A stretch of DNA of 64,000 nt from IMGVR_UViG_3300027771_001853:233624-297623, one strand, 5' to 3'. Positions 6,479-62,846 are shown, counted from the stretch's first letter. The notes: generated by a model from the letters alone, not told the origin. Program-made: numbers and translations.

Positions 6479-6580
6479 AAATTATCTTATATATTTTTAT
6501 TATAGTTTTATTCATACATAAATAGTGAGGGGTACGTAAAAAGTTTGTGTTTTACACCTCAAAACCCGTAAAATTTAACT

Positions 6581-7306
6581 TTATCTATCTAAAAAGTTGT
6601 TTAACTTCTTCATCATAGTTAAAGCATGTGTATTTGGACCATTAAAATCTGCTGGTATTGGTGGTGGTGTTGCCTCTTCTAAAGTCTCTTCATATTTGTC
6701 TTTGTCTTTTATGTCTTTGAATAGGTAAGCTCCTGGAGTTGATGGTGACGACACTAAATCAAAACATATCAATTCAAAATCATCTTGTACTATATTTTTT
6801 CCTCCTTCACTCTTTAGTGACCCTACACCCCTAGAAGAAATACCTAGAGTAACACCATGTCTTAATAGATTAGCTGCTATATCACCAACACATGAGATAA
6901 TACCCTTAGTGTGGTAAGCTGGTGAGGTTAGTATTTGTAGTTTCCCCATTAATGTGTCCCCGTCCCAAAAAGTCTCCACAACTCTATGGGAACTTCTTTC
7001 TAAGTCCACTAATGACGATTCTGGGTGATTTAATTCGGATAAGGCTCTACCTTGTCCTATTAGTTGTTGGTATTTGTCTACCTCTCTCTTTAATATGTCT
7101 GCTGGGTATATCCTACCATTTCTGTTTTGAACCCCACACTTCTGTAGGACAGCATAAATAAAAACACCTTCAGAATCTTTAAATCCTTTGGTTTCTGTTA
7201 TTATTTTTTTATTTAAATCGTAGTGTGGTGATATGTGTCCCGCATCAATTTCTAGTAGGACTCCTTTACCGATTTCGTTAGCTTCAAGTAATTTATATGT
7301 ACGCAT
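6581..7306 (-). CDS. gp21: prohead protease (gp21-like, peptidase S77)
   Basis: QNRNGRIYP, LSELNHP (His), GISSRGVGS (Ser), FDLVSSPSTPGA. Confidence 0.93.
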   Translation of the reverse strand: MRTYKLLEANEIGKGVLLEIDAGHISPHYDLNKKIITETKGFKDSEGVFIYAVLQKCGVQNRNGRIYPADILKREVDKYQQLIGQGRALSELNHPESSLVDLERSSHRVVETFWDGDTLMGKLQILTSPAYHTKGIISCVGDIAANLLRHGVTLGISSRGVGSLKSEGGKNIVQDDFELICFDLVSSPSTPGAYLFKDIKDKDKYEETLEEATPPPIPADFNGPNTHALTMMKKLNNFLDR

Positions 7307-7349
7307 AGATTAATATCTTTACATATAAATACAATAGAGATAATTAAAA

Positions 7350-7781
7350 TTATTTTTTATTTGAGTAGAAGTTAAAGTATTTGTTATTTTTAAAATTCTG
7401 GTTTTGAATATGACCTATTGTTTTGTGTACAGAATCTTTTATTGTTTGTGAACGGATGTTCTCTTTAACTTTAAGAAATAGGGTTATTTCACAAGAAATA
7501 TAACTTCTTTTTAATAGTTCGATACCACTTGTTCGTAAATCCAAATCTACAATATTTTTTTCTGTTTTAAATAAGTTATCGTCCAATACCTCATTTAAAC
7601 TAATTTTAATATCTCTTTTTAATAACCCAACAACCCTAACCCAATTAGGTGCTTCGTTAATTGGTTGGGCCCAAGATGAAAGATTCATATATAGCGATTT
7701 AAAATTCTTGGAGTCTACTGTCCCGTAGTTAGTTTTAAAACTAGGGTGTAGGTTAAATTTGATTTGTTTTCCTGACTTCAT
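7350..7781 (-). CDS. hypothetical protein in head cluster
   Basis: 143-aa ORF co-directional with flanking structural genes. Confidence 0.7.
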   Translation of the reverse strand: MKSGKQIKFNLHPSFKTNYGTVDSKNFKSLYMNLSSWAQPINEAPNWVRVVGLLKRDIKISLNEVLDDNLFKTEKNIVDLDLRTSGIELLKRSYISCEITLFLKVKENIRSQTIKDSVHKTIGHIQNQNFKNNKYFNFYSNKK

Positions 7782-7836
7782 GATATATTCTATTTTAGTA
7801 AAATATACTAACGAATTACTTATAAGTCAAAATAAT

Positions 7837-8568
7837 CTAAGATAGGTCCTCTTCTAATTGTTGTAACCTTAATAAGTCTTTTTTTCTATACCCACAATCA
7901 ACCACCTCATTTTCTACAACTAAAAGTTTATCTTTTAACTCTGTATTTTCAGTTTCTTTGATTAGGTTCGTTAGTAACTTATTTAGATTGTCTTTACTTG
8001 TATCCACTTTTTCTTTGAGTTCTCCCACTTCTATGGATAGGTATTCTTTTAGTTTACCTTTGTCGGATTCACTTAAAGAAGAATATTTTTCATTATATAA
8101 CCTAGTTAAACTAGAAACTAATAATGAATGTCTTACTGTTGTTGTTTCATTAATTTGTTCTGGTTGATTTAACCACGTTACTAATTCTTTTTTTATTTCA
8201 TTATGTTTTCTTGGGTTATATGAAAAGTTTTCAAAAATAAGTTTATCTAGTTTTTGATAAATTTTTTCACTATCACCCTTATAATAAGGACTTTTTTCTA
8301 TTAGTTTATTAATATTTGTGGATTCCGCTATTAGAACTTTAGATTTTGATTTTAGTTCAGTTAGGACGTTTTCTAAGAAAATCCTTGCCTCATTTTTATC
8401 AGTGAACCTTTGTTTATCTATTTCACCATACAGTGTAAAAAATTCTCTTAGTGTTTTGGTCTTTTTTAAAGACCCCATTAATACATTAAAATTTCTTTTA
8501 AATGTGCTTTTGTTAGAATATGATTCTGTTAGAATGTCGTTGATTCCCTTTTTTATTTTACCAAACAT
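7837..8568 (-). CDS. hypothetical helical protein in head cluster
   Basis: 243-aa ORF directly downstream of portal, preceded by TATTTATA motif; several L/I-x-E sites. Confidence 0.7.
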   Translation of the reverse strand: MFGKIKKGINDILTESYSNKSTFKRNFNVLMGSLKKTKTLREFFTLYGEIDKQRFTDKNEARIFLENVLTELKSKSKVLIAESTNINKLIEKSPYYKGDSEKIYQKLDKLIFENFSYNPRKHNEIKKELVTWLNQPEQINETTTVRHSLLVSSLTRLYNEKYSSLSESDKGKLKEYLSIEVGELKEKVDTSKDNLNKLLTNLIKETENTELKDKLLVVENEVVDCGYRKKDLLRLQQLEEDLS

Positions 8569-8592
8569 AGATTTATATTTTACTATAAATAT

Positions 8593-10443
8593 CTAATCTT
8601 TTAGTAAATCTTCTAGGTTCTTACTAACATCCTCTAATTCCTTAACACCCTTATTAAGTTTTATTACTCCGTTGTTTGTTCTATCCTCAAGAATTAGTGG
8701 TAAGTCCGAATCTCTGGCAAACATTTCTATCTCTAAGTCTGCACCCATATCAGCTCCTCCAGCTCCACCTTCTTCAGCTGGTGGTTCTTCTGGGGCATCA
8801 CCTCCTAGGTCACCCCCTGAAGGTGGTGGTACGTCACCAAATCCTCCAGTGTCTTCACCTTCTTCTGTACCTGATTCTGCACCTCCTGCGTCTTCTTTTG
8901 GTGTTCCGTATAAAGCATCAATTTTATCAAAAATACCAGTACTTGTTATAACTTCACCAGTTTTACCCAATTCTTCACCAACAGCTTTCTCTATTCTTTG
9001 TTGTTGTAAATCTAACTTAACTTCTTCATCACTCATACCCAACACATTCTTTTTAGCCCATGTTGATGACGTTGCTTGAATCCCATTTCCTGGGTCGGTA
9101 ACACAGTCTCTATATAACGTAACTTTTTCTTTCCAAAGTTCAATTTTTAGTAAGTCCGATTGTGTGGATGGGTTAGTTAACCCTAATGTAAAATTATCTA
9201 ACTCGTCTTCAAAACCTAATATATACAAATGTATTATTGCTATTTTATTTAGTTCTTGTATAATAGCTTTTTGGACGTGGTTTATCGTTCTTGCAAATCT
9301 AATGTCTTGTAATGATAAATTTTTACCCTCACCTACTACGTCTTCAAAACCTAAAAAAGCTTTAGGTACACGTAATGCAGCTAATAATTTTTTCTGTATG
9401 TACTCAATATCCGCAATCTCACTTAAATTCTGTGCACCGGGTAAAGTTTCTATTGGCATAGGTGCTGCCGGGTCACGAACTGGGATAAAGTAATCTTGGT
9501 CCACAGCTAATTGATTGTACCTTAAATCCACATTACCATTTTGTGGGTCAACAACTTGGTCTCTTTTAAATTTATTAGCGATTCTTTGTACATAAGCCTC
9601 AACATCTTTATCATCCATATTCCCAACATAGACCTTAAATACCCTTCTTTCTGGTGCTCTAGAAGTCCTATAAATCAACATGGCATCTTCAGCTAACAAT
9701 AATTGTTTCCATATTCTTCTAGACTTATCTAGTACCGAGGTGCCATATGGTAATCTTCTATCGTCACCCAATAACCTAAAATGAGCTACTTCCCAATTTT
9801 TAAAAACCATATCCTTATCTTTCCAACCAAACTCTATCTTCCTATCTTCAGTGTCACCGTCAAATGCTCCAGCACCATAAGCGTCTGGTTTATTTTCAAT
9901 TCTTTCAATTTCTATGTTTGGTAGTTGGTTTACACCTAAAACCCCCTTTTTAGGGTCCACTTTAAGATACACAAAATTATCACCGTATTTACAAGTATTT
10001 CTAATCCACATAGGTAAATTAGTTTCCACATCTATCACATTATTGAATAGGTCTGCTAAGATACTTTTTATTCTTTTTGATTCGGAGTATATGTTCAACA
10101 TAAACCCTTGTTCTGACATTGTTGTTGCTTCGTCAGCCATAATATCTAAAGCTGCTGAAATTTCCGGAGTAAACTCCATGGATTCATAGTCATAATAAGA
10201 AGCTAACCTTGTAGGTTCATAGTAGACCGCTTGTTGGTATAGTTGGTTTTCTACCTTACTCCATTGATTATTTATATAAGATGATTGTTGTTGTTGTAGT
10301 TTTTCTTTTTCGTACTCAGCTTTGTCGGTTGTTCTTAAAAGCACTTCCTTATCAAAATCGTATGATGGTTTTGGGGCTCTTGGGCCATTTGGTCCAAACA
10401 GGGAAGCTAGTCTCTGATATAATGTTAAGTTTTTTTCTGCCAT
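8593..10443 (-). CDS. gp20: portal protein (gp20-like)
   Basis: PEISAALDIMADE, EDAMLIYRTSRAPERRVFKVYVGN, DYFIPVR, IETLPGAQNLSEIADIEY, ALRVPKAFL. Confidence 0.95.
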   Translation of the reverse strand: MAEKNLTLYQRLASLFGPNGPRAPKPSYDFDKEVLLRTTDKAEYEKEKLQQQQSSYINNQWSKVENQLYQQAVYYEPTRLASYYDYESMEFTPEISAALDIMADEATTMSEQGFMLNIYSESKRIKSILADLFNNVIDVETNLPMWIRNTCKYGDNFVYLKVDPKKGVLGVNQLPNIEIERIENKPDAYGAGAFDGDTEDRKIEFGWKDKDMVFKNWEVAHFRLLGDDRRLPYGTSVLDKSRRIWKQLLLAEDAMLIYRTSRAPERRVFKVYVGNMDDKDVEAYVQRIANKFKRDQVVDPQNGNVDLRYNQLAVDQDYFIPVRDPAAPMPIETLPGAQNLSEIADIEYIQKKLLAALRVPKAFLGFEDVVGEGKNLSLQDIRFARTINHVQKAIIQELNKIAIIHLYILGFEDELDNFTLGLTNPSTQSDLLKIELWKEKVTLYRDCVTDPGNGIQATSSTWAKKNVLGMSDEEVKLDLQQQRIEKAVGEELGKTGEVITSTGIFDKIDALYGTPKEDAGGAESGTEEGEDTGGFGDVPPPSGGDLGGDAPEEPPAEEGGAGGADMGADLEIEMFARDSDLPLILEDRTNNGVIKLNKGVKELEDVSKNLEDLLKD

Positions 10444-10728: not shown

Positions 10729-10735
10729 ATTATTA

Positions 10736-12469
10736 TTATTTTAGTCCTCCGAATAACCATAAATATTCTTTAGGGTTGTTTGGGTCCATATTGACAGGTC
10801 TCCCTGAAACTGTATGTGGACTCCATACCGGTTTATTACCTCTGGTTGGTTCTTCTCTTGCTACATCGGTGGTAACCCAACTATCTAACATTGCTTTAGC
10901 CTGGTTTGTGTTCCTTTCTAGTTCAGCGAAAGAATTTTGGGCTACGTATAATGCCATAGCAATTGCCATAATTAAGTCATCGTGGTGTCCTTTCATATGG
11001 TCTGGACGACCATTTAAATAAACAAATGTTTTAAACTCATTAATTAACCTATGTGACCTAACAATAAAACCTGTCCTTAATTGTTCTTCTAGAGCTTGTA
11101 TTATTTGTGCTCTTTTACTGTTAAAGTTAATCCCGGGACATTTATCCTCTTGGTTTGGGTTGAACTTCCAAATGTCGTTAGATTTTACATTATCATAATA
11201 TAAATTTTTGTATCCTAGTTCTATTAATTTTCTAGACGTTGACACTCCCATACCACCGGTAATGTCTACCACAATAAAACACTTATATTTTATAGCCCAT
11301 TTATTTGCTAATTCAGCCGCTATATCTGGTGGGATTTTCCCTAAGTATTCTAATACTTGTTCCCTATCATCAAAATCTATAATAGTAAAAGATGTAAAAT
11401 CGTCACTATCCCCTCTGGAAACATCAATCCCCATAATGTAACGATGACCTTCTTTTGGTGGTTTCCAAACCCATAGAGTATTACCTACCCATATCTCTAG
11501 TGGGTCACACACGTCTTTCATTAAGTCAGCTATAGTGTCTGAAGGTATAACATTATCACCCGAACCTAAAAATGCACATTCTAGTTCTTGTGATATTTTT
11601 CTTCTGTCAAACTTTAATTTTTTACACATTTTTTCAAACCAATCAGTAAATGGTTTGTAACCTAACTGTAATAATTCATCAGCCCTATCTAACGAGTTTT
11701 CTAATATTTCTTCATCTTTATACTCATCTCTATTTAATAGGAAATGTGTAATATCTTTAGTTTTTACCCACCTTAATCCTTTATTAAATCTAGGGTCACG
11801 AAACCACGTTAAACTACTAATTTTAAATTGGTTTAGTCCTCTAATGGATTGGTCATATATCTCATAATAAATCCTGTCGAATCCGTTCGGTGTGGATATC
11901 ACCACAACCTTACCCCCTGTAGCTAAAGATGCCATACACGCTGCCCATAAATCATCACCGGACTCTATGTAAGCCGCCTCATCAAATATTAACATAGTGG
12001 GCGTGTAACCCCTCAACGCATCCACAGATGTTGCTACAGCTTTTACTTCTGAATCATTATTTAATTTATAATGTTTTTGAGTGTCTTTGTCTTTAGAAAA
12101 CCCAACATTTATCCAATCGGGCCACTGACGTAAAAATCCTTTTATTTTACTAGCCATCTCTACTGCCGTATCTAATTTATTAGCTAATATAAGTATTTTT
12201 TCTGGTTTTTCTTTTGATGCGAATTGTAGTGTTTTAGATATCCAAGCTGATGTAGCGGTAGACACTCCTGCCTGACGATACTTTAAAACTATATTATCAT
12301 TATAGTTTTCATAGTCATGAATCATCTCTACTTGTTCGGGAAATAATTTAAATGGGACGTACTTACTCTGAGTATTATCATAAGTTTCCAAATATGTTCT
12401 TAGAGCATAATCGGTGTCTTTATAACACTTAGCGTATTCTTTTATATATTCTTGTCTATTCATAGCCAT
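10736..12469 (-). CDS. terL: large terminase subunit (gp17-like)
   Basis: LKYRQAGVST Walker A region, LIFDEAAYI Walker B, ISTPNG, MGIDVSRG and HDDLIMA nuclease motifs; no intein evident. Confidence 0.95.
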   Translation of the reverse strand: MAMNRQEYIKEYAKCYKDTDYALRTYLETYDNTQSKYVPFKLFPEQVEMIHDYENYNDNIVLKYRQAGVSTATSAWISKTLQFASKEKPEKILILANKLDTAVEMASKIKGFLRQWPDWINVGFSKDKDTQKHYKLNNDSEVKAVATSVDALRGYTPTMLIFDEAAYIESGDDLWAACMASLATGGKVVVISTPNGFDRIYYEIYDQSIRGLNQFKISSLTWFRDPRFNKGLRWVKTKDITHFLLNRDEYKDEEILENSLDRADELLQLGYKPFTDWFEKMCKKLKFDRRKISQELECAFLGSGDNVIPSDTIADLMKDVCDPLEIWVGNTLWVWKPPKEGHRYIMGIDVSRGDSDDFTSFTIIDFDDREQVLEYLGKIPPDIAAELANKWAIKYKCFIVVDITGGMGVSTSRKLIELGYKNLYYDNVKSNDIWKFNPNQEDKCPGINFNSKRAQIIQALEEQLRTGFIVRSHRLINEFKTFVYLNGRPDHMKGHHDDLIMAIAMALYVAQNSFAELERNTNQAKAMLDSWVTTDVAREEPTRGNKPVWSPHTVSGRPVNMDPNNPKEYLWLFGGLK

Positions 12470-12509
12470 ATATAATAAATATCGACAAAATTATTCTAAG
12501 AGTACAATT

Positions 12510-17006: not shown

Positions 17007-17056
17007 ATTGTAAGTCTATTTGTTTCTTATAAATACTTCGATTAAAAAGAAAAAAT

Positions 17057-17818
17057 TTATATAGTTAATATGTTATCTATAAGTTTATTCTTTAAATCAA
17101 TTAATTTTTTAATATACCCGTTTCTTCTTAGTACTTTGAAGACCAAATTCTCATAAGAATATTCACCACCAGACTCTAATCCACAGCTTCTGTATTTCTT
17201 TAATTTAGCTTTAATGTCTTCAATTTCTTTTAGGGTTTTTTCTGGTTTAAGATTCTTAGACCTTTCCACTAACCTGTCTATAGCGTCTACCCAGTTAGTT
17301 GCTTTCTCATCTAACTTTTTATCATCTATGGTTACGTGTTGGTAGGAGGGTTCAACTATCCATTTATTGTATAGTACCGAGTACACACCACTAGAATGGT
17401 GTACTTCTCTATAGTCTTGTGAGTATATTTCTACCTCATAACCGTCTATAGTAATATCGTGGGTACTATTCCATATGGTTTTTTTACTATTTAAGTAATT
17501 TCTGACAAGTTCACTATTTTCGTCTATTTCATTAAAATCTAAAATTATGTGTAGGTCAATGTCTGAAAATTTACTCCAATTAAAATTAGCTAAACTACCA
17601 GTCATAGTCACATCATACACATCACATTCTTGTGTGTCTATATCACAACTTAACTCTTCCATACCGGTATAGTCAAGAAATCTGTCAGAAACACTTAGTA
17701 GTGTGGACCTAACTTTAGGGTTCAAAGTGTATGTCCCGTCTTCCATTTCGTCCCATATTGATGGTGCTAAATGGTCCTTAGTTTTAAAGCTTTTTAGTAT
17801 CGATGATTTTACTCCCAT
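17057..17818 (-). CDS. Pol-beta superfamily nucleotidyltransferase
   Basis: TMTGSLANFNWSKFSDIDLHII = GS-x8-DxD motif, third acid in EVEIYSQD. Confidence 0.8.
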   Translation of the reverse strand: MGVKSSILKSFKTKDHLAPSIWDEMEDGTYTLNPKVRSTLLSVSDRFLDYTGMEELSCDIDTQECDVYDVTMTGSLANFNWSKFSDIDLHIILDFNEIDENSELVRNYLNSKKTIWNSTHDITIDGYEVEIYSQDYREVHHSSGVYSVLYNKWIVEPSYQHVTIDDKKLDEKATNWVDAIDRLVERSKNLKPEKTLKEIEDIKAKLKKYRSCGLESGGEYSYENLVFKVLRRNGYIKKLIDLKNKLIDNILTI

Positions 17819-17842
17819 AACTTATAAATATTTTATAAATAA

Positions 17843-21057: not shown

Positions 21058-23106
21058 ATGAAAGAAATAATAAAATCGTCATTCTCGGGTATCGAAGAAG
21101 ATGGAGCTCAAAGTAAAAAACCAAAGAAAAGTAAATCAGAGAAAACATCTAGAACACCCATATTAGATAACTTTTCTAGAGATTTAATAAAATTAGCTAG
21201 TGAAGGAAAATTAGACCCTGTGGTCGGTAGACAAGCTGAAATAACTAGAGTAGCACAAATATTATGTAGGAGAAAGAAAAATAATCCTGTTTTGATAGGT
21301 GGTCCTGGTTGTGGTAAAACAGCTTTGGCTGAGGGATTGGCACTTAAAATACATAGTGGTAAATGCCCACGTAACTTATTAGATAAAAAAATAGTTGCAT
21401 TAGAACTAACTAGTTTAGTTGCTGGTACAAAATACAGGGGACAATTCGAAGAAAGAATGAAAGCTGTATTGGAGGAATTAAGGGATAATCCAGATATTAT
21501 AATTTTTATAGACGAATTACATACTGTCGTAGGTACAGGAAATTCATCTGGTTCACTAGATGCAGCTAATATCTTTAAACCAGCTTTAGCTAGAGGTGAA
21601 CTACAATGTATAGGAGCTACCACATTAGATGAGTATAGGGAGAATATAGAAAAGGATGGTGCATTAGAAAGAAGGTTCCAAAAAGTTATGGTAGAACCAA
21701 CCACTGTAGAGGAAACATTAAAGATATTAACCAACCTTAAATCGAAATACGAAGACCACCATAAAGTGGTTATTAGTAACGAAATACTAAAACTTTGTGT
21801 TCAATTAGCTGAAAGATATATAACACATAGAGAATTTCCTGATAAAGCTATCGATATAATGGATGAGGTTGGTGCTAAGGTACAAGTAGATATAGAGTTC
21901 CCAGATGAAATAGAAAATTTACGTAAGAGCATTGGTAAGTTGGGTGATGAGAAAAAATCAGTAGTTAAGTCACAACAATATGAAAAGGCAGCACACCTTA
22001 GAGATAAGGAATTAAAATTAATAACTAAGTTGGATGATTTAAAACTTGCGTGGGAAATAGAAATGGAGGAGCAAAGGACAGTTGTAAGTGTGGACGATTT
22101 ATACACTGTGGTTTCTCAGATGACAAAAATACCATTAGCTAGATTATCTGAAAATGAAATGGCTAGTTTAATAGAATTAGAATCACAGTTAAAAAACTAT
22201 GTAGTTGGTCAAGATGAAGCTATTGAAAAAGTTTGTAAAGCTATAAGAAGAAATAGAGTTGGTATTAGAGATGGTTCTAAACCTATAGGTACGTTTATGT
22301 TTTTAGGTCAAACAGGTATAGGTAAAACACATTTAGCTAAATCACTAGCAAAAGAAATATTTGGTTCTGAAGATTCTCTTATTAGGGTAGATATGTCAGA
22401 ATATCAAGAAAAATTTAACACTTCTAGGTTGATAGGTTCTCCTCCTGGTTACGTTGGGTACAACCAAGGTGGTCAATTAACTGAAGCCGTTAGAAATAAA
22501 CCCTACAGTGTTGTATTATTTGACGAGATAGAGAAAGCACATCCAGATGTTTTTAACGTACTTCTACAGGTGTTCGATGATGGGCATATGACTGATGGTA
22601 TGGGTAGAGTTATTAATTTTAAAAATACGTTAATAATTATGACATCCAATATTGGTGTTAAGAAACTACAGGAGTTTGGTAGTGGTATAGGTTTTGATAC
22701 CTCCGCTAGATTAGAGAAAAAAGAAGAAGCGATGAAAGATATTATAGCATCACAATTAAAAAAATCTTTTAGTCCAGAATTCCTAAACAGGGTAGACGAC
22801 ACTATTGTATTTAACCAGTTAGATGAAAAGAACATAGAAGGTATTGTAGAAATGGAACTTAACAACCTTAAGAAAAGATTATTAGATAAAGATTACAATA
22901 TAACGTTCAATGCTTCGGTTAAGAAATTTATAGCTAAAGAATCGTATGATGAAAAGTTTGGTGCAAGACCATTAAAAAGAATGATTCAAAATAAAATAGA
23001 GGACTTTATTTCAGAAGAAATTTTAAAAGGTAAAATAAAAGAAAAAAGCCGTTATTCTATTAGTATGGATAAAAAGACTGAGAAACCTAAATTAAAGAGT
23101 CTTTAA
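21058..23106 (+). CDS. clpC: ClpC-type AAA+ unfoldase lacking the N-terminal Clp-repeat domain
   Basis: GGPGCGKT, IFIDELH, AGTKYRGQFE, UVR-like QQYEKAAHLRDKE, GQTGIGKT, PPGYVGY, LFDEIEK, ClpP-docking GIGF; only about 30 residues before the first ATPase-proximal helix. Confidence 0.9.
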   Translation: MKEIIKSSFSGIEEDGAQSKKPKKSKSEKTSRTPILDNFSRDLIKLASEGKLDPVVGRQAEITRVAQILCRRKKNNPVLIGGPGCGKTALAEGLALKIHSGKCPRNLLDKKIVALELTSLVAGTKYRGQFEERMKAVLEELRDNPDIIIFIDELHTVVGTGNSSGSLDAANIFKPALARGELQCIGATTLDEYRENIEKDGALERRFQKVMVEPTTVEETLKILTNLKSKYEDHHKVVISNEILKLCVQLAERYITHREFPDKAIDIMDEVGAKVQVDIEFPDEIENLRKSIGKLGDEKKSVVKSQQYEKAAHLRDKELKLITKLDDLKLAWEIEMEEQRTVVSVDDLYTVVSQMTKIPLARLSENEMASLIELESQLKNYVVGQDEAIEKVCKAIRRNRVGIRDGSKPIGTFMFLGQTGIGKTHLAKSLAKEIFGSEDSLIRVDMSEYQEKFNTSRLIGSPPGYVGYNQGGQLTEAVRNKPYSVVLFDEIEKAHPDVFNVLLQVFDDGHMTDGMGRVINFKNTLIIMTSNIGVKKLQEFGSGIGFDTSARLEKKEEAMKDIIASQLKKSFSPEFLNRVDDTIVFNQLDEKNIEGIVEMELNNLKKRLLDKDYNITFNASVKKFIAKESYDEKFGARPLKRMIQNKIEDFISEEILKGKIKEKSRYSISMDKKTEKPKLKSL

Positions 23107-26100
23107 ATTGTCATCACAACAACCCTTAACTTTTCTACAGAAACAACACCAATAATCCTAATTGTGTTATAGTTCATTATAGTAATGGTCACAGACGCGT
23201 CTCCAAGTAGTTTCATATCTCCACTAGCCCCATCGGTACTACCAATTAAGGAAATTAACACATCTCTACTATTAAGGTTGTGTGTCACATAAATCGAAGA
23301 ACCCACACCTAGGATGAAAGTGTTAAAATGGTCGGTAGTATATTTTCTAGCTAGTCCCATCTCGGTACTACCTGATGAAAGTGTACTACTTGGTGATGGG
23401 ATTTTTATTGAACCTGAACCTTGTGTATTTGCTGAGTAGACTGTTGACCCTGTTATCCACCCATTTGATATACTTATCCCTCTATCATCAGGGGTATTAA
23501 GCTCGACGTTACCAATAGTAGCTTTTAATACTAGTTTAGTACCTTTTACTTCTGATATTATCTCACTGTCACCAAATTTAGTTTTACCTTCTTCCGATTC
23601 TATTGTACTTTTACCACCTAGAGTGATATATGAACTTGCGTGTACACTTGTGGCTGAAACAGTATTACCGGTTAAGAATGTAGCCGTTATACCACCAATC
23701 ACATCTAGTTTACCATCTTCACCACCACCTTTCAGTCCAGAATTTAATGTTAATACACCATCTACAGTTGTATCACCACTAATGTTAGTTGTCCCACTAA
23801 ATGTTACCGGAACTCGTCCAAAACCTACAGAGTATGGCCAAATAACAACTATATTATCATCTGCTCTAAATAAGGGAGTACCAGGGTATGTGGTAGCGGT
23901 TATTGTTAAACCACCATTAATTGTAACATTTTTATTAAATTTACTATCCTCAGAGAATGAAGTCACACCAGAAACTCTTAATGCCCCATCTAAAATAGTG
24001 TTTCCTGTTACTTCAAATTGAGTGGGGGTACTAGCGTTTCTAAATCTAGCGATAAGTAGTTCACTTCCTTTTTCATCGCCATCAGGTGACCCTTGTATCC
24101 TTAAACTATCCTTGGTGGTACCATTATTATTTATTGTTAATCTACTACTAAAGTCTTGGTTAGACTCGTACCCACCAAAACCAGACGGTGTTCCAACCAT
24201 AACACTATCACCACTAATTGTTAATGTTTGATTTGTTGAACTACCTGTGAAGATACCAAATGGTGTATAACTACCATGACCAACGGCTATCCCAGAAGGT
24301 GATAGTTTTATCTGAGCTAGATTATACAATGGGTTTATGTTTTCAGATGTGGATTTTACCACTAAACCTGCTCCCACATTACTTCTACCTAAGAAATGAG
24401 CTACCACACTATTTTTACATGCCGCACTTAACGCTGGTTGTAAATCACTAGCTTCGATAGAAAGTGCTGCTGATGGGATGAAAGACAATCGTTGAGGGGT
24501 TACAGCTAAACCACTAGTTATTTGTGTTGTACTGGCTAGAATAATATTAGTACCATCTGGTCCTTCACCGGTTGCACCACAAGCGGTGATGTTTGCTGTG
24601 ACCAAACTACAAGCACTTAACACCCCTAAGACTTGGGTATTACCCGATATCAGACCACCGGAAGTGGTTGAGGACCTGGAGGAACTTGAGGTTTTAAAGT
24701 CTTGGAAATCCTTTACCTTAATAGCTCCGAACCCACCCGGTTTATTAGGGTCTAACTCTCTAACTAGAATTTGTGTTAACGTTGTTGAGGTCATTGCTGA
24801 CTGTACGTTTAATAAATTTGTGTATGACGTATCAGCACTATAAGCGAATATATCTTGTCCCGCAAGTATACTACTGTTGACCGCACTTGGTGCTATATGA
24901 TGGTTATACCCAGCTAATACCGCTGAGTTATTTCCAGTAATATGGTTGTTTCTACCTGCAAGTACGGATGACGAATTACCGTTAATAAGATTTTTTTGCC
25001 CTCCTAATATTGTAGAATATTGTGAAAGGGTACTAGCACTATTTAAAGAACCATTAAGTATTGTGTTGTATTGTTGTATGTTGGATATTGAATTGGCGGT
25101 AATAACTATTAGGTTTTGATTACCGTTAACTATTGTATTGTATGAGTTCTGGGTGGAAGTTCTGACTGGGTCAGCACCAGGTACCATCTGTACAGTATTT
25201 GTCCTACCAATAATGTTGTTGGTATTACCATTAATTATTGAATTACTTTTTGGTTGGTACGATGTTATTGTCTGATTTTGGCCATTGAGTATCTGGTTAT
25301 TTTGACTTTCTTTCAGACCACCCTTAGTATCGATAGTATTATAGTAACCATTTAGTATGGTCCCATATGATGTGGCTCCTGACTTTATGCGGTTATTTAC
25401 TCCAGTTCCTATAAGATTAGCCGTCCATCCACTTATCGCATTACCATATCCACCGGCAATTACATTACCTACACCACCCGCACGTCCACCGGAAGCCGTA
25501 CTAAAACCAAATTGTCCTGATATTTTATTCCAAGCTCCACTAATAATAGTTGATATGGAACCACTAAGAATGTGGTTACCGGTACCACCTACAACTGTAT
25601 TACCAATATAAACTGATGCATTTGAACCTCCAGCCCAGAATTTGTCTTTAGGTCTTATTAGGTTGGTACTCCCTATGGTACCCCCACTAAGCATATCACC
25701 ACCACCAAGAATTTGTGACCACTCAGAGGTTATAACGTTTTCATTAGGTCCTCCTGGTGATGTCGGGTTCCATGAATTTATCGGTCCTGCCCATTTATAT
25801 GGTGAAAGAAAGTTATTACATGTATCTGCTGTAACTGTTGTCCCCGAATTAGTATATAAATAAAGAGTACACCCTATTGTATGTGCAGAAACAACATAAC
25901 TATCTCCACTCATAAATTGTGGCTGTACTGAACCTGGTACTGGTGCCCATCTTGCTCTACCATCTGCATTTACACCAGCTAGGAATACGTTTGGACTTCC
26001 GGAATAGGCTGGACTATTAGGGATTATTATATTATTAGCTGCACCTCCATGATAATGGAATGGTCTGTCACCATCCCCAGTGTCTGTCCACACATTTAAT

Positions 26101-31866: not shown

Positions 31867-31899
31867 AATATATCTTTTAATGATAAATATGCACGATGT

Positions 31900-36724: not shown

Positions 36725-36770
36725 AATAATTATTTTTCTCCTATAAATATGTTTATAACGGTAAAAAAAG

Positions 36771-37364: not shown

Positions 37365-37379
37365 TGTTCTATGTTTATC

Positions 37380-37459
37380 TATAAATACTTTGTAACATAT
37401 TATAAATATTTTCGTATACCCTATTAGTTAATTAAAAAAAACATTATCTTTGTATTATG
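37380..37459. repeat. copy A of an 80-bp bidirectional promoter cassette
   Basis: First 37 nt identical and 68/80 identical without gaps to 47191..47270. Confidence 0.92.
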
Positions 37460-39716: not shown

Positions 39717-39775
39717 AGAGCGTTTTACACATAAATAGTTTGATAAGTTGTTTAATATTATTTATCATTGATAAT

Positions 39776-40503: not shown

Positions 40504-40601
40504 AGTATATTCTTTTTAAATAAATATACGTGAAGTATAATATAGTCTTTATTGTCTTTTCAAATTGTTGACTTAGATTACAATATAGAGTATAACATAT
40601 A

Positions 40602-40786: not shown

Positions 40787-41110
40787 ATGATACCACACGT
40801 AGACGAAAAATATCTATCGACAGGAAAATTAATATCAACCCCATGGAGGTATGTGGATACTGAATACTCAAAACCGTACAATGTAATGTTTTTGGTACAG
40901 GAAAGAAGGAATGTACACGACATGGGTAAAACAGATGTTAGTTATTGTGAATTATTAGGTTACAAAAATTTTAATAAATTCAAAAAGGTAATACACGAAC
41001 AAATGAAATGGTACGAACCTAAATTGTGTGAATTACATAAGAAACATTACCCGACTATAAATAAAATAAACGACATCATATATAAATTAAGTCCTTGGAG
41101 ATGGCAATAG
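40787..41110 (+). CDS. hypothetical protein
   Basis: 107-aa ORF. Confidence 0.6.
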   Translation: MIPHVDEKYLSTGKLISTPWRYVDTEYSKPYNVMFLVQERRNVHDMGKTDVSYCELLGYKNFNKFKKVIHEQMKWYEPKLCELHKKHYPTINKINDIIYKLSPWRWQ

Positions 41111-41426: not shown

Positions 41427-41450
41427 TAATTTTTTTTTAATAAATACTCC

Positions 41451-42415: not shown

Positions 42416-42496
42416 TGTTGGTCTTTCTAGTTTTATTTGTTACATTTAATTAATAAATAGATTCTATTAATATAATATTAATTAAAAAAGTTTAAA

Positions 42497-44036: not shown

Positions 44037-44058
44037 ATATTTGTTTATATAAATATAC

Positions 44059-44384: not shown

Positions 44385-44454
44385 AGTATTTGTTTTTTCT
44401 TTTATAATAAATATCTCCAACTATTAAAAAGTTTGTGGTTGTTATTTACTTTTT

Positions 44455-44751: not shown

Positions 44752-44821
44752 AGTATTTGTTTTTATTATAAATAGCCGTATACTTAAGAAAATAACATTA
44801 TTATAACAAAAAATTAAAAAA

Positions 44822-46741: not shown

Positions 46742-46772
46742 AATTTTGTTTAATTATAAATATCTTTATTTT

Positions 46773-47186
46773 CTATTTATTCCCACCGACCTTAAAGCCT
46801 ATAGGTCCTTCTTCTTTGTCTGGTAAACCATCAAGAATATCAATCAATTCCTGTACTAGTGAATGTAGTTCACCACCTTCAGCTAACAGTTGGTACATTC
46901 TTTGTACTAACACATCGTCCTCGTATAGTGATTTTTTATTTACTTGGTCTTTTATATGTCCAGATACCACATCTATAAAAGAATCTATATCATCTTTTAA
47001 TTCACCACTATAACTTTTGGTGAACCCCATAGCTTCTTCCACGTCTTCTTTTTTTTCTGATTCTGGTTTACATGCCTTACTTTTACCACACCAGTACATC
47101 CCTTTAGGACACTTATTTTTCCCCCCTTCTGAGACAACTTTTTCTATAAGTTTTACTAATTCTGTTTCTGTTAATTTAAATTTCAT
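46773..47186 (-). CDS. KLTE-leader protein with small Cys motif
   Basis: MKFKLTETELVKLIEKVVSEG then KCPKGMYWCGKSKACKP; C-terminal PIGFK. Confidence 0.72.
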   Translation of the reverse strand: MKFKLTETELVKLIEKVVSEGGKNKCPKGMYWCGKSKACKPESEKKEDVEEAMGFTKSYSGELKDDIDSFIDVVSGHIKDQVNKKSLYEDDVLVQRMYQLLAEGGELHSLVQELIDILDGLPDKEEGPIGFKVGGNK

Positions 47187-47190
47187 ACTT

Positions 47191-47270
47191 TATAAATACT
47201 TTGTAACATATTATAAATATTTTCGTACACCATATTAGTAACCAATAAAAATTAATATCTTCGTAATATG
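47191..47270. repeat. copy B of the 80-bp bidirectional promoter cassette
   Basis: See 37380..37459; ends at the ATG of the first CAP gene. Confidence 0.92.
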
Positions 47271-49661: not shown

Positions 49662-49754
49662 AATAATTTCTATTTTATTATAAATACCACGAAATAAATT
49701 AAAACCTAGGGTATTGTTATGGTCATTTTTTTTTAATATACTTTAAATAAAGTA

Positions 49755-51369: not shown

Positions 51370-51590
51370 ATACTAATAAATATAACCTTTCTTTGGTTTA
51401 TACGTATAAAGAGTTACTTGGCCTCTTATGTTTTTATTCTGATTTTAATTTTTTTGGTTTCAACACTAACTTCAGATACCTCGGCCTTAATAATTGTAGA
51501 TATAAAATGTTTTATTTCTTTTAATCCCATGAACTAATAATAACTAACAATCTACTTTCGTAAATGAAATTAATTCCTTATCTTTGTACT

Positions 51591-58121: not shown

Positions 58122-58176
58122 TAGATTAGTCCTTTATATATAAATAGTAGTTAAAGGGTGACCATTTGTCAAACCA

Positions 58177-58689: not shown

Positions 58690-58721
58690 ACCAATAAATA
58701 TTCCTATAGAGTCAATTAAAA

Positions 58722-59556: not shown

Positions 59557-59604
59557 ATAATTAAATGTAACGAATAAAAACATAAATTTCCAATATTTAT
59601 TGAT

Positions 59605-60266: not shown

Positions 60267-60284
60267 TGTGTTTTTTTTTTTGAT

Positions 60285-60566: not shown

Positions 60567-60576
60567 GGTATATTAC

Positions 60577-60978: not shown

Positions 60979-61016
60979 GATATTATTTTACTATAAATAG
61001 TTTATGTTTTGCAAAT

Positions 61017-61043
61017 AAAAAAAAGGGTCCTAAAAAAGGACCC
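61017..61043 (-). terminator. intrinsic terminator
   Basis: Minus strand GGGTCCT-T5-AGGACCC followed by T8, just after 61052..61351. Confidence 0.75.
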
Positions 61044-61051
61044 CTTAATGA

Positions 61052-61351: not shown

Positions 61352-61656
61352 GATATTTTTTTTATATATTTGTTTATGTCTCTAGGACATAGTAAAAATA
61401 AAACATTTAATAACAAAGTCCATTTAATTTAATGGACAATTTAGTAAAATTACAGGATGAGTGGAGCAAAGAAGAAAAAACCAAGTAAAATATCAACACA
61501 TAAAAGAAAGAAACAAAGTAGGAAAAATAGGCATAAAACTAAAAAATAATATGGAAACAATAACAATAGTAGCATTCTTTGGGATGGGTGTAGCAGTAGG
61601 TCTATACATATCAAGTCAAATTGATAACAATATAGATAAAAACATTAAAAAATAAC

Positions 61657-62043
61657 ATGGAAATAATTAAAACACGTAAATTCGATAGAAGACGAGCTTT
61701 AGACTGTAAACTAATTAAAAAGTCTGAAACTTACACTGGTTACTACAAATACGAAGTAACCATAGGGGAGAAAGATGGGACGATACATAAACAACCAGCA
61801 TATGGTAAAGACATGCAAGGTGCTTTAAGTAGACTATTAAAAAAAGAATTGACCGTTAAGGTTGAAAGAAAACTGGAGACCAATACTGGATTCATATTTT
61901 TAGCATGGTTAGTAACTATGGGGACACCAGCTTTATTTGCTGATAGAAGTTCTCCGTGGTTCCTAGCGTACATATTTGGTGTGGTGTTAGTTTTGGTTTG
62001 TATGACTGTTTGGTGGTATAACTACGTAAATAAAGGAGAATAA
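61657..62043 (+). CDS. hypothetical protein with two C-terminal TM segments
   Basis: 128 aa; AYGKDMQGAL. Confidence 0.65.
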   Translation: MEIIKTRKFDRRRALDCKLIKKSETYTGYYKYEVTIGEKDGTIHKQPAYGKDMQGALSRLLKKELTVKVERKLETNTGFIFLAWLVTMGTPALFADRSSPWFLAYIFGVVLVLVCMTVWWYNYVNKGE

Positions 62044-62049
62044 TAGATT

Positions 62050-62301
62050 ATGGTGGAAACAATTTTAGATACAATATCAGAGATAAACCCAAAAGCATTA
62101 AAAGCAGATGGGTTTAATGATGCGATTTTAGGTATAACAAGTAGATGTGGTGACGATTCTCTTATTGCTTATGACTATGACGAATGTGTAAAAATTCTAC
62201 AGAAAGACATGTCCTACGAAGATTCTGTAGAATATATGGAATTTAATGTGGTGGGTTCTTATGTAGGAGAGGGGACACCTATTTTTATAAAAAAATTATA
62301 A
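62050..62301 (+). CDS. hypothetical phage protein
   Basis: ADGFNDAILG...EYMEFNVVGSYVGEGTPIFI. Confidence 0.7.
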   Translation: MVETILDTISEINPKALKADGFNDAILGITSRCGDDSLIAYDYDECVKILQKDMSYEDSVEYMEFNVVGSYVGEGTPIFIKKL

Positions 62302-62480
62302 TGGAAATAATAGAAACGGTATTAGGTATGGTTTGGGTGTTGGTATGTGTAGGTGTTTTAGGTTTCGGTGTATCGTCTTACCTACATTTACTGACTAGAG
62401 GTGACAATAATAAGATAATGGATAATATCGATAAAATGGAAAGAGATGAAAAGAAACGTAAGGAAGGTAAGACTAATTAA
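62301..62480 (+). CDS. 59-aa N-terminal TM protein (not in ORF track)
   Basis: MEIIETVLGMVWVLVCVGVLGFGVSSYL; start overlaps upstream stop. Confidence 0.5.
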   Translation: MEIIETVLGMVWVLVCVGVLGFGVSSYLHLLTRGDNNKIMDNIDKMERDEKKRKEGKTN

Positions 62481-62769
62481 TCTTAGTTCTTAAGAATCTC
62501 TTAACCGGGTTTATATAGTAATGTTTAATGAACGTTCTAATCTCCGGCATCTTTAGTTTCCTTCGTAACCTATTTTCCCATATTGTGGCTGGACAAACAA
62601 GAACTGGTGAAAAGATTAAATGCATGACCCAGACATTCACGGGTACCCATATCCAGAAAGGTTCGTTAATCATAACAAACACGGGGGTTATTATTAGTAA
62701 CACTATAAAGATGTGGTGTATGAGTACTAACAGTAATAATATAAACTTATCATCAATCAATTCTTTCAT
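62473..62769 (-). CDS. DUF2784-like membrane protein
   Basis: Two TM segments followed by CPATIWENRLRRK. Confidence 0.6.
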   Translation of the reverse strand: MKELIDDKFILLLLVLIHHIFIVLLIITPVFVMINEPFWIWVPVNVWVMHLIFSPVLVCPATIWENRLRRKLKMPEIRTFIKHYYINPVKRFLRTKIN

Positions 62770-62846
62770 ACATTATAAATAACACACTATACCCGTTTTA
62801 TACAGGAACCTGAAATAAACCCGAAAGTTTTCGGAAAAATTTTTTT

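What the first reader, a model, noticed from the sequence alone, without database searches (positions are those of the whole stretch)
6518..62781. Candidate late promoter is the reverse complement of the T4 late promoter
Seen: coding-strand TATTTAT(A) lies 4-40 nt upstream of at least 24 minus-strand starts (plus-strand ATAAATA at 6518, 7325, 8585, 12475, 17029, 17824, 31883, 36743, 37381, 39731, 40520, 41440, 42453, 44049, 44407, 44768, 46756, 47192, 49680, 51376, 58140, 58694, 60993, 62775). It flips orientation before two plus-strand genes (39759, 59594). Established: T4 gp55 late promoters are TATAAATA on the coding strand. Inference: a gp55-like sigma with different specificity; several sites are only 4-5 nt from ATG, implying near-leaderless mRNAs. 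Caveat: an AT-only 7-mer is common by chance.
Basis: partly seen in the sequence, partly recalled or inferred. Interest (0 to 1): 0.62.

Follow-up and report, generated by a model that had tools for sequence, protein, structure and literature searches.

The report
Conserved TATTTAT late promoter of flavobacterial phages
A strictly conserved 7-base signal, TATTTAT, sits just upstream of about a quarter of this 298-kb marine phage's genes, including its head and packaging genes, and is most likely a T4-style late promoter read by a divergent phage sigma factor; this is a new variant of a known mechanism, still unproven by RNA mapping.

Summary
All 26 listed sites exist. In the whole 297,623-bp phage genome, TATTTAT is the most enriched 7-mer upstream of genes (79 in 50-nt upstream regions vs 11.1±3.3 in shuffles; window 29 vs 3.3±1.9). 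It is oriented with the gene, tolerates no mismatch, has no -35 partner, and is about 2-fold depleted inside genes on both strands. It is kept at orthologous sites in 80 related contigs. It is also the top upstream 7-mer in two distant cultured T4-like phages, Flavobacterium phage immuto and Microcystis phage Mel-JY01; in Mel-JY01 it lies upstream of the Shine-Dalgarno sequence. All three lineages encode one shared sigma-like protein. Its N-terminal half folds like sigma region 2 and like T4 gp55 and keeps gp55's Tyr97. The "reverse complement" framing is formally true but misleading: read in the same orientation, the motif is T4's TATAAATA with the two central bases changed (AA to TT). Spacing to the ATG has two modes, 4-5 nt and 13-18 nt, and is conserved at orthologous genes, which fits leaderless and short-leader mRNAs. 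No start-site data could be obtained, and no gp33 or gp45 homologue was found. Verdict: new variant of a known kind; promoter function and the sigma pairing are inferred.

The parts
6518..6524 (-). TATTTAT site, 39 nt upstream of the ATG at 6478 (493-aa gene followed by the major head protein gene 3130-4968)
7325..7331 (-). TATTTAT site, 18 nt upstream of the ATG at 7306 (head maturation protease, phrog_207)
8585..8591 (-). TATTTAT site just after the portal stop codon, 16 nt upstream of the ATG at 8568; kept in 16 of 16 relatives
10759..10765 (-).
12475..12481 (-). TATTTAT site 5 nt upstream of the terminase large subunit ATG at 12469 (leaderless class; 4-5 nt spacing kept in the closest relatives)
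17029..17035 (-). TATTTAT site, 22 nt upstream of the ATG at 17006
17824..17830 (-). TATTTAT site 5 nt upstream of the ATG at 17818 (253-aa gene, phrog_36119); 4-6 nt spacing kept in relatives down to 37% protein identity
17835..17841 (-). Second, tandem TATTTAT, 16 nt upstream of the same ATG and directly after a hairpin plus T-run
31883..31889 (-). TATTTAT site, 16 nt upstream of the ATG at 31866 (1111-aa protein)
36743..36749 (-). TATTTAT site, 18 nt upstream of the ATG at 36724 (large protein with a lysin-like domain)
37381..37387 (-). TATTTAT site, 16 nt upstream of the ATG at 37364; part of a duplicated promoter cassette
37402..37408 (-). Tandem upstream TATTTAT of the same cassette (21 nt start to start)
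39731..39737 (-). TATTTAT site, 14 nt upstream of the ATG at 39716; in a divergent intergenic region
39759..39765 (+). Flipped TATTTAT, 10 nt upstream of the plus-strand ATG at 39776
40520..40526 (-). TATTTAT site, 16 nt upstream of the ATG at 40503
41440..41446 (-). TATTTAT site, 13 nt upstream of the ATG at 41426
42453..42459 (-). TATTTAT site, 37 nt upstream of the ATG at 42415
44049..44055 (-). TATTTAT site, 12 nt upstream of the ATG at 44036, directly downstream of a terminator-like hairpin plus T-run (44081-44066)
44407..44413 (-). TATTTAT site, 22 nt upstream of the ATG at 44384
44768..44774 (-). TATTTAT site, 16 nt upstream of the in-frame ATG at 44751 (the longest ORF starts further upstream)
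46756..46762 (-). TATTTAT site, 14 nt upstream of the ATG at 46741
47192..47198 (-). TATTTAT site 5 nt upstream of the ATG at 47186 (leaderless class); second copy of the duplicated cassette
47213..47219 (-). Tandem upstream TATTTAT of the second cassette copy
49680..49686 (-). TATTTAT site, 18 nt upstream of the ATG at 49661
51376..51382 (-). TATTTAT site, 6 nt upstream of the ATG at 51369
58140..58146 (-). TATTTAT site, 18 nt upstream of the ATG at 58121
58694..58700 (-). TATTTAT site, 4 nt upstream of the ATG at 58689 (leaderless class)
59594..59600 (+). Flipped TATTTAT, 4 nt upstream of the plus-strand ATG at 59605 (leaderless class)
60993..60999 (-). TATTTAT site, 14 nt upstream of the ATG at 60978, downstream of a hairpin plus T-run
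62775..62781 (-). TATTTAT site, 5 nt upstream of the ATG at 62769 (leaderless class)

Best explanation
TATTTAT(A/T), preceded by a base other than T, is the single -10-like element of the late or structural-gene promoters of a T4-related jumbo phage of a Bacteroidota host (inferred). It has no -35 partner. It is read on the non-template strand by host RNA polymerase core carrying a phage sigma. That sigma is a 232-aa protein encoded outside the window at genome 212380-213078 (minus strand). Its N-terminal half is a sigma region-2 / T4 gp55-like domain. In the T4 register the two adenines that gp55 buries in deep pockets (-12 and -8) are retained, and only -10 and -9 differ (AA to TT). Transcription would start about 5-7 nt downstream of the motif. 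Genes with 4-5 nt spacing would then give mRNAs that begin at or next to the AUG (leaderless). Genes with 13-18 nt spacing would give A-rich leaders of about 8-12 nt without a Shine-Dalgarno sequence, as expected for a Bacteroidota host.

Shown: existence, enrichment, orientation, strictness, conservation, depletion inside genes, co-occurrence with the sigma family, and the sigma fold. Inferred: promoter activity, late timing, which sigma reads the motif, and the position of the start site.
For: Statistics:
- Top 7-mer upstream of genes; 79 vs 11.1+-3.3 genome-wide and 29 vs 3.3+-1.9 in the window.
- 77 oriented intergenic sites.
- Single-mismatch variants are at most 3.8x enriched against about 15x for the exact word.
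- No -35 or other upstream element.
- Orientation: TATTTATA facing a gene 40 times, TATAAATA facing a gene 12 times.

DNA-level signal:
- Depleted inside genes in both orientations: sense 39 vs 80.2+-8.7 and antisense 54 vs 83.0+-8.0 in codon shuffles; same-composition words give ratios of 0.75-1.03.
- Several sites sit directly after a hairpin plus T-run.

Late genes: the motif precedes the terminase, the prohead protease, the gene after the portal gene and the MCP operon.

Conservation:
- 16 of 16 relatives keep it after the portal stop codon although the flanks have diverged.
- 315 of 749 genes in 80 related loci carry it, against 34 with the reverse complement.
- The 4-5 nt spacing is kept at orthologous genes down to 37% protein identity.

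Distant phages:
- It is the top upstream 7-mer in the structural region of Flavobacterium phage immuto (17 vs 1.1; TerL only 28% identical) and of Microcystis phage Mel-JY01 (11 vs 1.3), where it lies 13-43 nt from the ATG, in most cases upstream of a GGAG-type Shine-Dalgarno sequence.
- The same pipeline returns ATAAATA/TATAAAT on the T4 late region.

Sigma:
- phmmer against T4 gp55 E 1.5e-4; phrog_234 E 2e-4 to 5e-4; Sigma70_r2 E 6e-4.
- The AF2 model matches only sigma factors at the top: sigmaE region 2, Z 8.3, rmsd 2.8, 91 of 91 residues; T4 gp55 7d7c_F, Z 8.0, rmsd 6.2, 132 of 137 residues.
- Homologues are present in immuto (profile E 2e-19) and Mel-JY01. Both lack any canonical Sigma70_r2 hit.
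- T4 Y97, which forms the pocket for A-12 (PMC7892883), is the one invariant residue of the recognition segment. H95 becomes Y or F and N13 becomes Q in most members; these two form the -9 pocket in T4.
Against: - There is no transcription start-site or time-course data. The only RNA runs found are assembled contigs of relatives over the MCP and its upstream gene, and they cannot show 5' ends.
- Sequence similarity to gp55 is weak (hhalign probability 4%), and Z values near 8 are modest for helical proteins.
- No gp33 (phrog_254) or gp45 (phrog_223) homologue was found, and the sigma lacks gp55's C-terminal clamp-binding tail. The T4 activation mechanism is therefore not demonstrated.
- A megaphage (LR756508.1) with a homologue of the sigma shows no TATTTAT enrichment in the 50 kb sampled.
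- Under strict T4 geometry (+1 is the 7th base after TATAAAT), the start site in the 4-5 nt class would fall inside the ATG. Leaderless starts need a 1-2 nt shorter discriminator.
- The motif precedes about 26% of genes across the whole genome, not only recognisable structural genes, so 'late' is not established for all of them.
Confidence: 0.65

Rival explanations
1. TATTTAT is a promoter element, but it is read by another factor: the phage's canonical sigma (regions 2 and 4; genome 85993-86787) or the host's primary sigma. The gp55-like protein would then do something else.
For: A canonical sigma with Sigma70_r2 (E 5e-15) and Sigma70_r4 (E 1e-13) is encoded. The motif partly resembles the Bacteroidota -7 box TAnnTTTG, matching 6 of 8 positions (own knowledge of that consensus). 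The assignment of the gp55-like protein rests on weak similarity.
Against: Immuto and Mel-JY01 use the same motif but have no Sigma70_r2 match other than the gp55-like family. The motif is shared by phages whose hosts are recorded as Flavobacterium and Microcystis, which argues against a host-specific sigma. There is no -35 or -33 element, which a region 2 + region 4 sigma or the Bacteroidota primary sigma would need. TATTTAT fits neither TAnnnT nor TAnnTTTG.
Confidence: 0.15
2. The motif acts at the RNA level within longer transcripts, as a U-rich translation enhancer (for example an S1-binding site) or as an endoribonuclease processing site that creates translatable 5' ends. It would not be a promoter.
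For: It lies close to start codons, with tight spacing modes at 4-5 and 13-18 nt. The host does not use Shine-Dalgarno sequences (GGAG upstream of 7 of 292 genes), so other initiation signals are expected. Many sites sit between tightly packed co-oriented genes.
Against: Only about 26% of genes carry it. It has two distinct spacing classes, and distances of 33-43 nt upstream of the Shine-Dalgarno sequence in Mel-JY01. It is also depleted on the antisense strand of genes, where an RNA signal would be neutral. Some sites follow terminator-like hairpins. Exact 7-of-7 conservation is unlike S1 binding sites.
Confidence: 0.1
3. The motif is the operator of a DNA-binding regulator (activator or repressor) or another DNA signal next to promoters, rather than the -10-like element itself.
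For: It is short, exact, orientation-specific and intergenic. It sometimes occurs in tandem 11 or 21 nt apart (17824/17835, 37381/37402, 47192/47213).
Against: No other conserved promoter element accompanies it. Its AT-only composition, its fixed short distance to genes and its TAT-NN-AT skeleton match the T4 late -10-like element. It co-occurs with a sigma-like protein.
Confidence: 0.07
4. It is a chance accumulation of an AT-only 7-mer in AT-rich intergenic DNA.
For: The total count in the window equals expectation (47 vs 43.8). Intergenic DNA is AT-rich.
Against: z is about 21 against dinucleotide shuffles of the upstream regions themselves. Same-composition words are 2-15 times rarer. The motif is conserved in 80 related loci and in two distant phages.
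Confidence: 0.01

Closest known systems
Phage T4 late promoters (TATAAATA) read by gp55, with gp33 and the gp45 sliding clamp
   Same: A single, short, AT-only, nearly invariant -10-like element with no -35 element. It sits in front of head, packaging and tail genes of a T4-related phage (T4-like terminase, portal, MCP and protease). Six of eight bases are identical in the same orientation, including the adenines that gp55 flips into deep pockets (-12 and -8; PMC7892883). A gp55-like sigma with the conserved Tyr97 equivalent is encoded.
   Different: The central dinucleotide is TT, not AA, and the 8th base is A or T. No gp33 or gp45 homologue is detectable. The sigma is 232 aa, carries an extra helical C-terminal domain of about 95 aa, and lacks the clamp-binding tail. 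Many sites are 4-5 nt from the ATG. The host is a Bacteroidota bacterium that does not use Shine-Dalgarno sequences.
T4-superfamily phages lacking gp33 and carrying an extra canonical sigma (Sinorhizobium phage PhiM9 / P10VF; PMC4621102)
   Same: A T4-like structural module, a gp55 homologue, no gp33, and an additional canonical sigma factor gene in the phage genome.
   Different: PhiM9's extra sigma is RpoE-like and was proposed as the late sigma. Here comparative data favour the gp55-like protein, because immuto and Mel-JY01 have the motif without a canonical sigma.
Bacteroidota primary-sigma promoters (-33 TTTG / -7 TAnnTTTG)
   Same: An AT-rich element starting with TA close to the start site. 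The host phylum matches. A TTTG-N19-TAnnTTTG site precedes the operon of the phage's canonical sigma.
   Different: TATTTAT ends in AT(A/T), not TTG, and has no -33 TTTG partner. It is also shared with a phage recorded on a cyanobacterial host.
Leaderless mRNAs and promoters that overlap start codons (for example lambda cI from PRM)
   Same: There is a fixed, very short distance between a promoter element and the ATG, so that the transcript would start at or next to the AUG.
   Different: Leaderless starts are not demonstrated here. They are inferred only from the conserved 4-5 nt spacing.

Membership tests
T4-type (gp55-dependent) late promoter | Single -10-like element, no -35 element | tested here: met
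   Position-specific counts over 79-81 sites show no information upstream apart from a weak T at -15 and not-T at -1.
T4-type (gp55-dependent) late promoter | Consensus TATAAATA on the non-template strand | tested here: not met
   The consensus is TATTTAT(A/T). TATAAAT occurs 18 times in the upstream sense orientation against 79 for TATTTAT. The T4 control gives ATAAATA with the same pipeline.
T4-type (gp55-dependent) late promoter | Precedes late (virion structure and packaging) genes | tested here: met
   Sites precede the terminase, the protease, the gene after the portal gene and the MCP operon here, and annotated structural genes in immuto and Mel-JY01. Timing itself was not measured.
T4-type (gp55-dependent) late promoter | Phage encodes a gp55 homologue | tested here: inconclusive
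   A 232-aa protein: phmmer against gp55 E 1.5e-4, phrog_234 E 2e-4 to 5e-4, structural match to 7d7c_F with Z 8.0 over 132 of 137 residues, Y97 conserved; but hhalign probability is only 4%.
T4-type (gp55-dependent) late promoter | gp33 co-activator present | tested here: not met
   phrog_254 gives no hit at E<=1 in the genome. hhalign of the sigma family against gp33 is insignificant. The record is 93% complete.
T4-type (gp55-dependent) late promoter | gp45 sliding clamp present, and a clamp-binding tail on the sigma | tested here: not met
   phrog_223 gives no hit. The C-terminus of the sigma family does not resemble gp55's tail. A very divergent clamp is not excluded.
T4-type (gp55-dependent) late promoter | Transcription starts about 6-7 nt downstream of the element, after DNA replication begins | not testable with these tools
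   Only assembled RNA contigs were available.
Sigma-70 family protein (the 232-aa candidate) | Region 2 fold that binds the clamp helices and the -10 non-template strand | tested here: met
   All top structural matches are sigma factors: 4lup_A Z 8.3, rmsd 2.8, 91 of 91 residues; 2o7g_A Z 7.5. Pfam Sigma70_r2 E 6e-4, below the curated cut-off.
Sigma-70 family protein (the 232-aa candidate) | Region 4 helix-turn-helix | tested here: inconclusive
   The C-terminal domain modelled alone (pLDDT 79.9) gives sigma region 4 matches only at Z 4.4-5.5, within noise. There is no Pfam region 4 hit.
Bacteroidota primary-sigma promoter | -7 TAnnTTTG with -33 TTTG | tested here: not met
   The motif ends in AT(A/T), and there is no TTTG enrichment 17-23 nt upstream.
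Leaderless mRNA | Primary 5' end at the A of the AUG | not testable with these tools
   Only indirect evidence: a sharp 4-5 nt spacing class (16 of the 84 measured distances in this genome, 42 sites in the relatives) that is conserved at orthologous genes.

The most novel reading that the evidence does not exclude
A globally abundant, uncultivated clade of roughly 300-kb marine phages of Bacteroidota shares a late-transcription system with Flavobacterium phage immuto and Microcystis phage Mel-JY01. That system descends from the T4 system but differs from it. A gp55-like sigma carrying its own extra C-terminal domain would work without gp33 or a clamp tail. It would recognise TATTTAT through a remodelled -9/-10 pocket (H95 to Y or F, N13 to Q). 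It would launch a sizeable class of truly leaderless late mRNAs in a host phylum that lacks Shine-Dalgarno-based initiation.
Probability: 0.4. Interest if true: 0.72.

Novelty: new variant of a known kind. Interest (0 to 1): 0.58.

Why it matters
It gives a simple, testable rule for marking late transcription units in a very large group of environmental phages. There are more than 7,900 homologues of the sigma in metagenomes, including Tara Oceans data, and at least 598 related portal loci in IMG/VR; almost all their genes are unannotated. It assigns a function to a conserved 'hypothetical protein', KNV73_gp118 in the cultured phage immuto. It offers a natural specificity variant of the gp55-promoter pair (AA to TT at -10 and -9, with identifiable pocket substitutions) for studying how minimal sigmas read single-stranded -10 DNA. 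It also points to leaderless late mRNAs in phages of Bacteroidota, a phylum whose translation initiation is poorly understood. Because immuto and its Flavobacterium host are in culture, every step can be tested directly.

Tried and rejected
- **Host -7 box mimicry.** I considered that the motif merely copies the Bacteroidota TAnnTTTG box. I set this aside because the same motif occurs in Mel-JY01, whose host is recorded as Microcystis, and because there is no -33 partner.
- **gp33, gp45 and clamp-loader searches** (phrog_254, phrog_223, phrog_168). No gp33 or gp45 was found. The AAA+ hits were the FtsH-like protease and PhoH.
- **phmmer with T4 gp44, gp62, gp45, gp46, gp47 and RpbA** found nothing in the genome.
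- **RNA evidence.** One search found two metatranscriptome entries with identical contigs, probably one data set filed twice. They cover only the MCP and its upstream gene, from relatives 90-99% identical, and give no 5'-end information. This is no evidence either way.
- **C-terminal domain of the sigma.** Modelled alone, it gave no fold match above noise. hhalign against gp33 was insignificant.
- **Megaphage LR756508.1** has a sigma homologue, but the 50 kb around its terminase show no clear upstream motif with my ATG-only gene calls. Unresolved.
- **Generic sigma-70 promoter scan** of 36-56 kb was not enriched (73 vs 82.3).
- **Literature searches** for the motif with phage, promoter or sigma terms, for immuto and for Mel-JY01 found no prior description. 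The library is incomplete, so earlier work cannot be excluded.
- **Gene calls** used for the statistics are my own crude longest-ATG ORFs of at least 50 aa (292 genes). Small genes and non-ATG starts are missed.

Full report
**Context.** The window is bases 233624-297623 of a 297,623-bp IMG/VR virus record (34.7% G+C, 93% complete by CheckV). It carries a T4-like head and packaging module:
- major head protein, 3130-4968;
- prohead protease, 6581-7306;
- portal, 8593-10443;
- large terminase, 10736-12469.

The nearest cultured phage is Flavobacterium phage vB_FspM_immuto, with only 28% terminase identity. Shine-Dalgarno sequences are essentially absent: GGAG occurs upstream of 7 of 292 genes, and leaders are A-rich at -14 to -10. 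The closest cellular relatives of an FtsH-like phage gene are almost all Bacteroidota, at 56-60% identity. The host is therefore very probably a member of the Bacteroidota. This is an inference.

**The observation.** The raw count in the window is not enriched (47 vs 43.8±5.7). Placement and orientation are:
- 38 of the 47 copies are in the minus-gene orientation.
- 30 lie 4-39 nt upstream of an ATG on the same strand.
- With my own crude gene calls (292 longest-ATG ORFs), TATTTAT is the single most enriched 7-mer in upstream regions of the whole genome.
- In 50-nt upstream regions it occurs 79 times against 11.1±3.3 (max 22) in dinucleotide-preserving shuffles of those same regions. In the window the figures are 29 against 3.3±1.9.
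- The other twenty 7-mers with five T and two A occur 5-34 times, and the highest of those overlap the motif.
- 96 of the 189 genomic copies lie in the 4.3% of the genome that is intergenic, and 77 of them point at a start codon within 60 nt.

**Anatomy of the motif.**
- All seven bases are effectively invariant. Single-mismatch variants are at most 3.8-fold enriched, against about 15-fold for the exact word.
- The preceding base is rarely T, and the following base is A (40 sites) or T (27 sites).
- Nothing resembling a -35 or -33 element is present.
- Distances from the motif to the ATG fall into two classes: 4-5 nt (16 of the 84 measured distances in this genome) and a broader mode at 13-18 nt.
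- Several sites follow a hairpin plus T-run directly, for example 44081-44066 followed by 44055-44049.
- Inside genes the word is under-represented in both orientations. Sense: 39 vs 80.2±8.7. Antisense: 54 vs 83.0±8.0, in codon shuffles. Same-composition control words give ratios of 0.75-1.03.
- Avoidance on the untranscribed antisense strand is what a DNA-level initiation signal predicts. An RNA-level signal would not predict it.

**Conservation in close relatives.** IMG/VR holds at least 598 related portal loci.
- In 16 of 16 relatives where the portal C-terminus could be placed (64-69% protein identity), TATTTAT follows the portal stop codon while the flanks have diverged.
- Across 80 related loci, 315 of 749 genes have the motif within 50 nt upstream, against 34 with its reverse complement. 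The same two spacing classes appear.
- The 4-5 nt spacing is retained in front of the terminase in the closest relatives. It is also retained (4-6 nt) in front of the orthologues of the 253-aa gene at 17057-17818, down to 37% protein identity.

**Conservation in distant phages.** Two cultured T4-like phages show the same signal.
- Flavobacterium phage immuto: TATTTAT is the top upstream 7-mer in the 50 kb holding its structural genes (17 vs 1.1). It precedes the terminase, the portal, the tail sheath, the tail tube and the baseplate hub, but not the primase, the exonuclease or NadR.
- Microcystis phage Mel-JY01: the motif is again the top upstream 7-mer (11 vs 1.3), 13-43 nt from the ATG, and in most cases it lies upstream of a GGAG-type Shine-Dalgarno sequence. 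That placement is what a promoter predicts, not a ribosome-binding signal.
- As a positive control, the same script run on the T4 late region returns ATAAATA and TATAAAT.

**The candidate reader.** A 232-aa protein is encoded at genome 212380-213078 (minus strand), outside the window. It closes a run of about 28 genes that have no TATTTAT and are largely glycan-biosynthesis genes.
- It matches T4 gp55 by phmmer (E 1.5e-4), the gp55 PHROG (E 2e-4 to 5e-4) and Pfam Sigma70_r2 (E 6e-4, below the curated cut-off).
- Its AlphaFold model (pLDDT 75.5) matches almost only sigma factors among its best hits. SigmaE region 2 bound to -10 DNA: Z 8.3, rmsd 2.8 Å, 91 of 91 residues. T4 gp55 (7d7c_F): Z 8.0, rmsd 6.2 Å, 132 of 137 residues, and 17% identity, among the highest of the top matches.
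- It has more than 7,900 homologues in metagenomes.
- Homologues occur in immuto (profile E 2e-19; KNV73_gp118, annotated 'hypothetical protein') and in Mel-JY01.
- Neither of those phages has any other Sigma70_r2 match.
- This genome also has a canonical sigma with regions 2 and 4 at 85993-86787. The two-gene operon that carries it is preceded by a Bacteroidota-type TTTG-N19-TAnnTTTG site.
- The motif therefore tracks the gp55-like family, not the canonical sigma and not one host phylum.

**Relation to T4.** The cryo-EM study of the gp55 open complex (PMC7892883) shows gp55 flipping non-template A-12 into a deep pocket (Y97), A-9 into a shallow pocket (N13, H95) and A-8 into a deep pocket (T99).
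- Written in that register, T4 reads T A T A A A T A and this motif reads T A T T T A T (A/T).
- They differ only at -10 and -9. Both deep-pocket adenines are retained.
- The 'reverse complement' relation is thus a by-product of the near-palindromic T4 8-mer. It holds for only about half of the sites.
- phmmer and hhalign give the same gap-free register between gp55 and the new family.
- In a seven-sequence alignment, the segment KA[YF]SYF..I.KN[YW][LC] aligns with gp55's NPHAYITQACFNAF. Y97 is the only invariant residue of that segment.
- H95 is replaced by Y or F. N13 is replaced by Q in most members. F86 is conserved (as F or Y), and C102 is kept only in this phage's own clade.
- That pattern fits a remodelled -9/-10 pocket, but this is a hypothesis.

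**Differences from the T4 system.**
- No gp33 or gp45 homologue was detected.
- The sigma lacks gp55's clamp-binding tail. Instead it has a helical C-terminal domain of about 95 aa. Modelled alone, that domain has no fold match above noise; sigma region 4 matches reach only Z 4.4-5.5.
- How the holoenzyme is activated is therefore open.
- The situation recalls PhiM9-type T4-superfamily phages, which lack gp33 and carry an extra canonical sigma (PMC4621102).

**Leaderless inference.**
- If the A at motif position 2 is taken as the -11 adenine (the σ70 register, from my own knowledge), +1 falls on the 6th base after the motif. That is the A of the ATG in the 5-nt class.
- In strict T4 numbering, +1 would fall one base later.
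- Start-site choice normally tolerates ±1 nt and prefers a purine, so leaderless or one-base-leader mRNAs are plausible. They are not shown.
- The sharpness of the 4-5 nt class and its conservation at orthologous genes are the evidence.

**What could not be done.** The single RNA search returned two metatranscriptome entries with identical contigs. They cover only the MCP and its upstream gene and cannot reveal 5' ends. A megaphage (LR756508.1) with a sigma homologue showed no clear motif in the 50 kb sampled. Literature searches found no earlier description of this motif or of the sigma family, but the library is incomplete.

**Verdict.** The motif is real, highly non-random, conserved, and acts at the DNA level. 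It is best explained as a T4-type single-element late promoter with an altered central dinucleotide, read by a divergent gp55-like sigma. This is a new variant of a known kind. Promoter activity, timing, the sigma assignment and the leaderless starts remain inferences, and all can be tested in the cultured immuto / Flavobacterium system.

Noticed in passing
genome 85993-86787 (minus strand), outside the window; locus L172:1075-1869: A second, canonical phage sigma factor (Sigma70_r2 E 5e-15, Sigma70_r4 E 1e-13). The two-gene operon that carries it is preceded by a Bacteroidota-type TTTG-N19-TAnnTTTG site. This suggests a cascade from host sigma to phage sigma to the gp55-like sigma.
   Followed up: partly
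genome-wide; in the window at about 7802, 10451 and 58144 (minus strand): Twelve intergenic TTGAC-N16-19-TAnnnT sites point at genes. This is a classical sigma-70 architecture that a Bacteroidota primary sigma should not use. They may be the targets of the canonical phage sigma (middle genes?). Enrichment is modest: 16 of 74 genomic matches lie in the 4.3% of sequence that is intergenic.
   Followed up: partly
window 37370-37450 and 47180-47260 (minus strand): A duplicated promoter cassette of roughly 60-90 nt. Its last 45 nt or so are nearly identical between the two copies and contain two TATTTAT copies 21 nt apart. The two downstream genes (36771-37364 and 46773-47186) are barely similar to each other.
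   Followed up: partly
window 21058-23106 (+): A full-length FtsH-like AAA+ protease gene (phrog_4871, E 7e-235) on the opposite strand from its neighbours and without a TATTTAT. Its nearest cellular relatives are Bacteroidota at 56-60% identity. It is probably a host-derived auxiliary gene and gives a clue to the host.
   Followed up: partly
genome about 213-240 kb, reaching into window 111-725 and beyond: A run of about 28 co-oriented genes with no TATTTAT. It encodes GDP-mannose dehydratase, epimerases, several glycosyltransferases, a fucosyltransferase-like protein, a DegT-type aminotransferase, an asparagine-synthase-like protein and PhoH, forming a large glycan-biosynthesis block. It ends with the gp55-like sigma gene.
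   Followed up: partly
window 23103-28529 and 28531-31866 (minus strand): Two giant adjacent genes (1808 and 1111 aa) have no PHROG match. A segment of about 250 nt is shared between them at 67% identity (window about 26719-26971 and 30101-30362), which suggests paralogous domains, perhaps of fibre or tail proteins.
   Followed up: no
window 34406-36829 (minus strand): An 807-aa protein has an endolysin-like domain only at residues about 575-740. It may be a virion-associated lysin or a tail-tip protein.
   Followed up: no
window 3200-6416: Assembled contigs from a marine metatranscriptome library, filed twice, match the MCP and its upstream gene at 90-99% identity. Relatives of this phage are therefore present, and probably expressed, in that sample.
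   Followed up: partly
LR756508.1 100321-101031 (locus L183:1495-2205): A 484-kb uncultured megaphage encodes a homologue of the gp55-like sigma (40% identical to immuto's). The 50 kb around its terminase show no TATTTAT enrichment; a few TATTTAA sites lie 45-55 nt upstream of ORFs.
   Followed up: partly
window 63905-63911 and 41057-41063 (minus orientation): Two intergenic or antisense TATTTAT copies have no called gene within 60 nt downstream. They may point to unannotated small ORFs or to non-coding transcripts.
   Followed up: no
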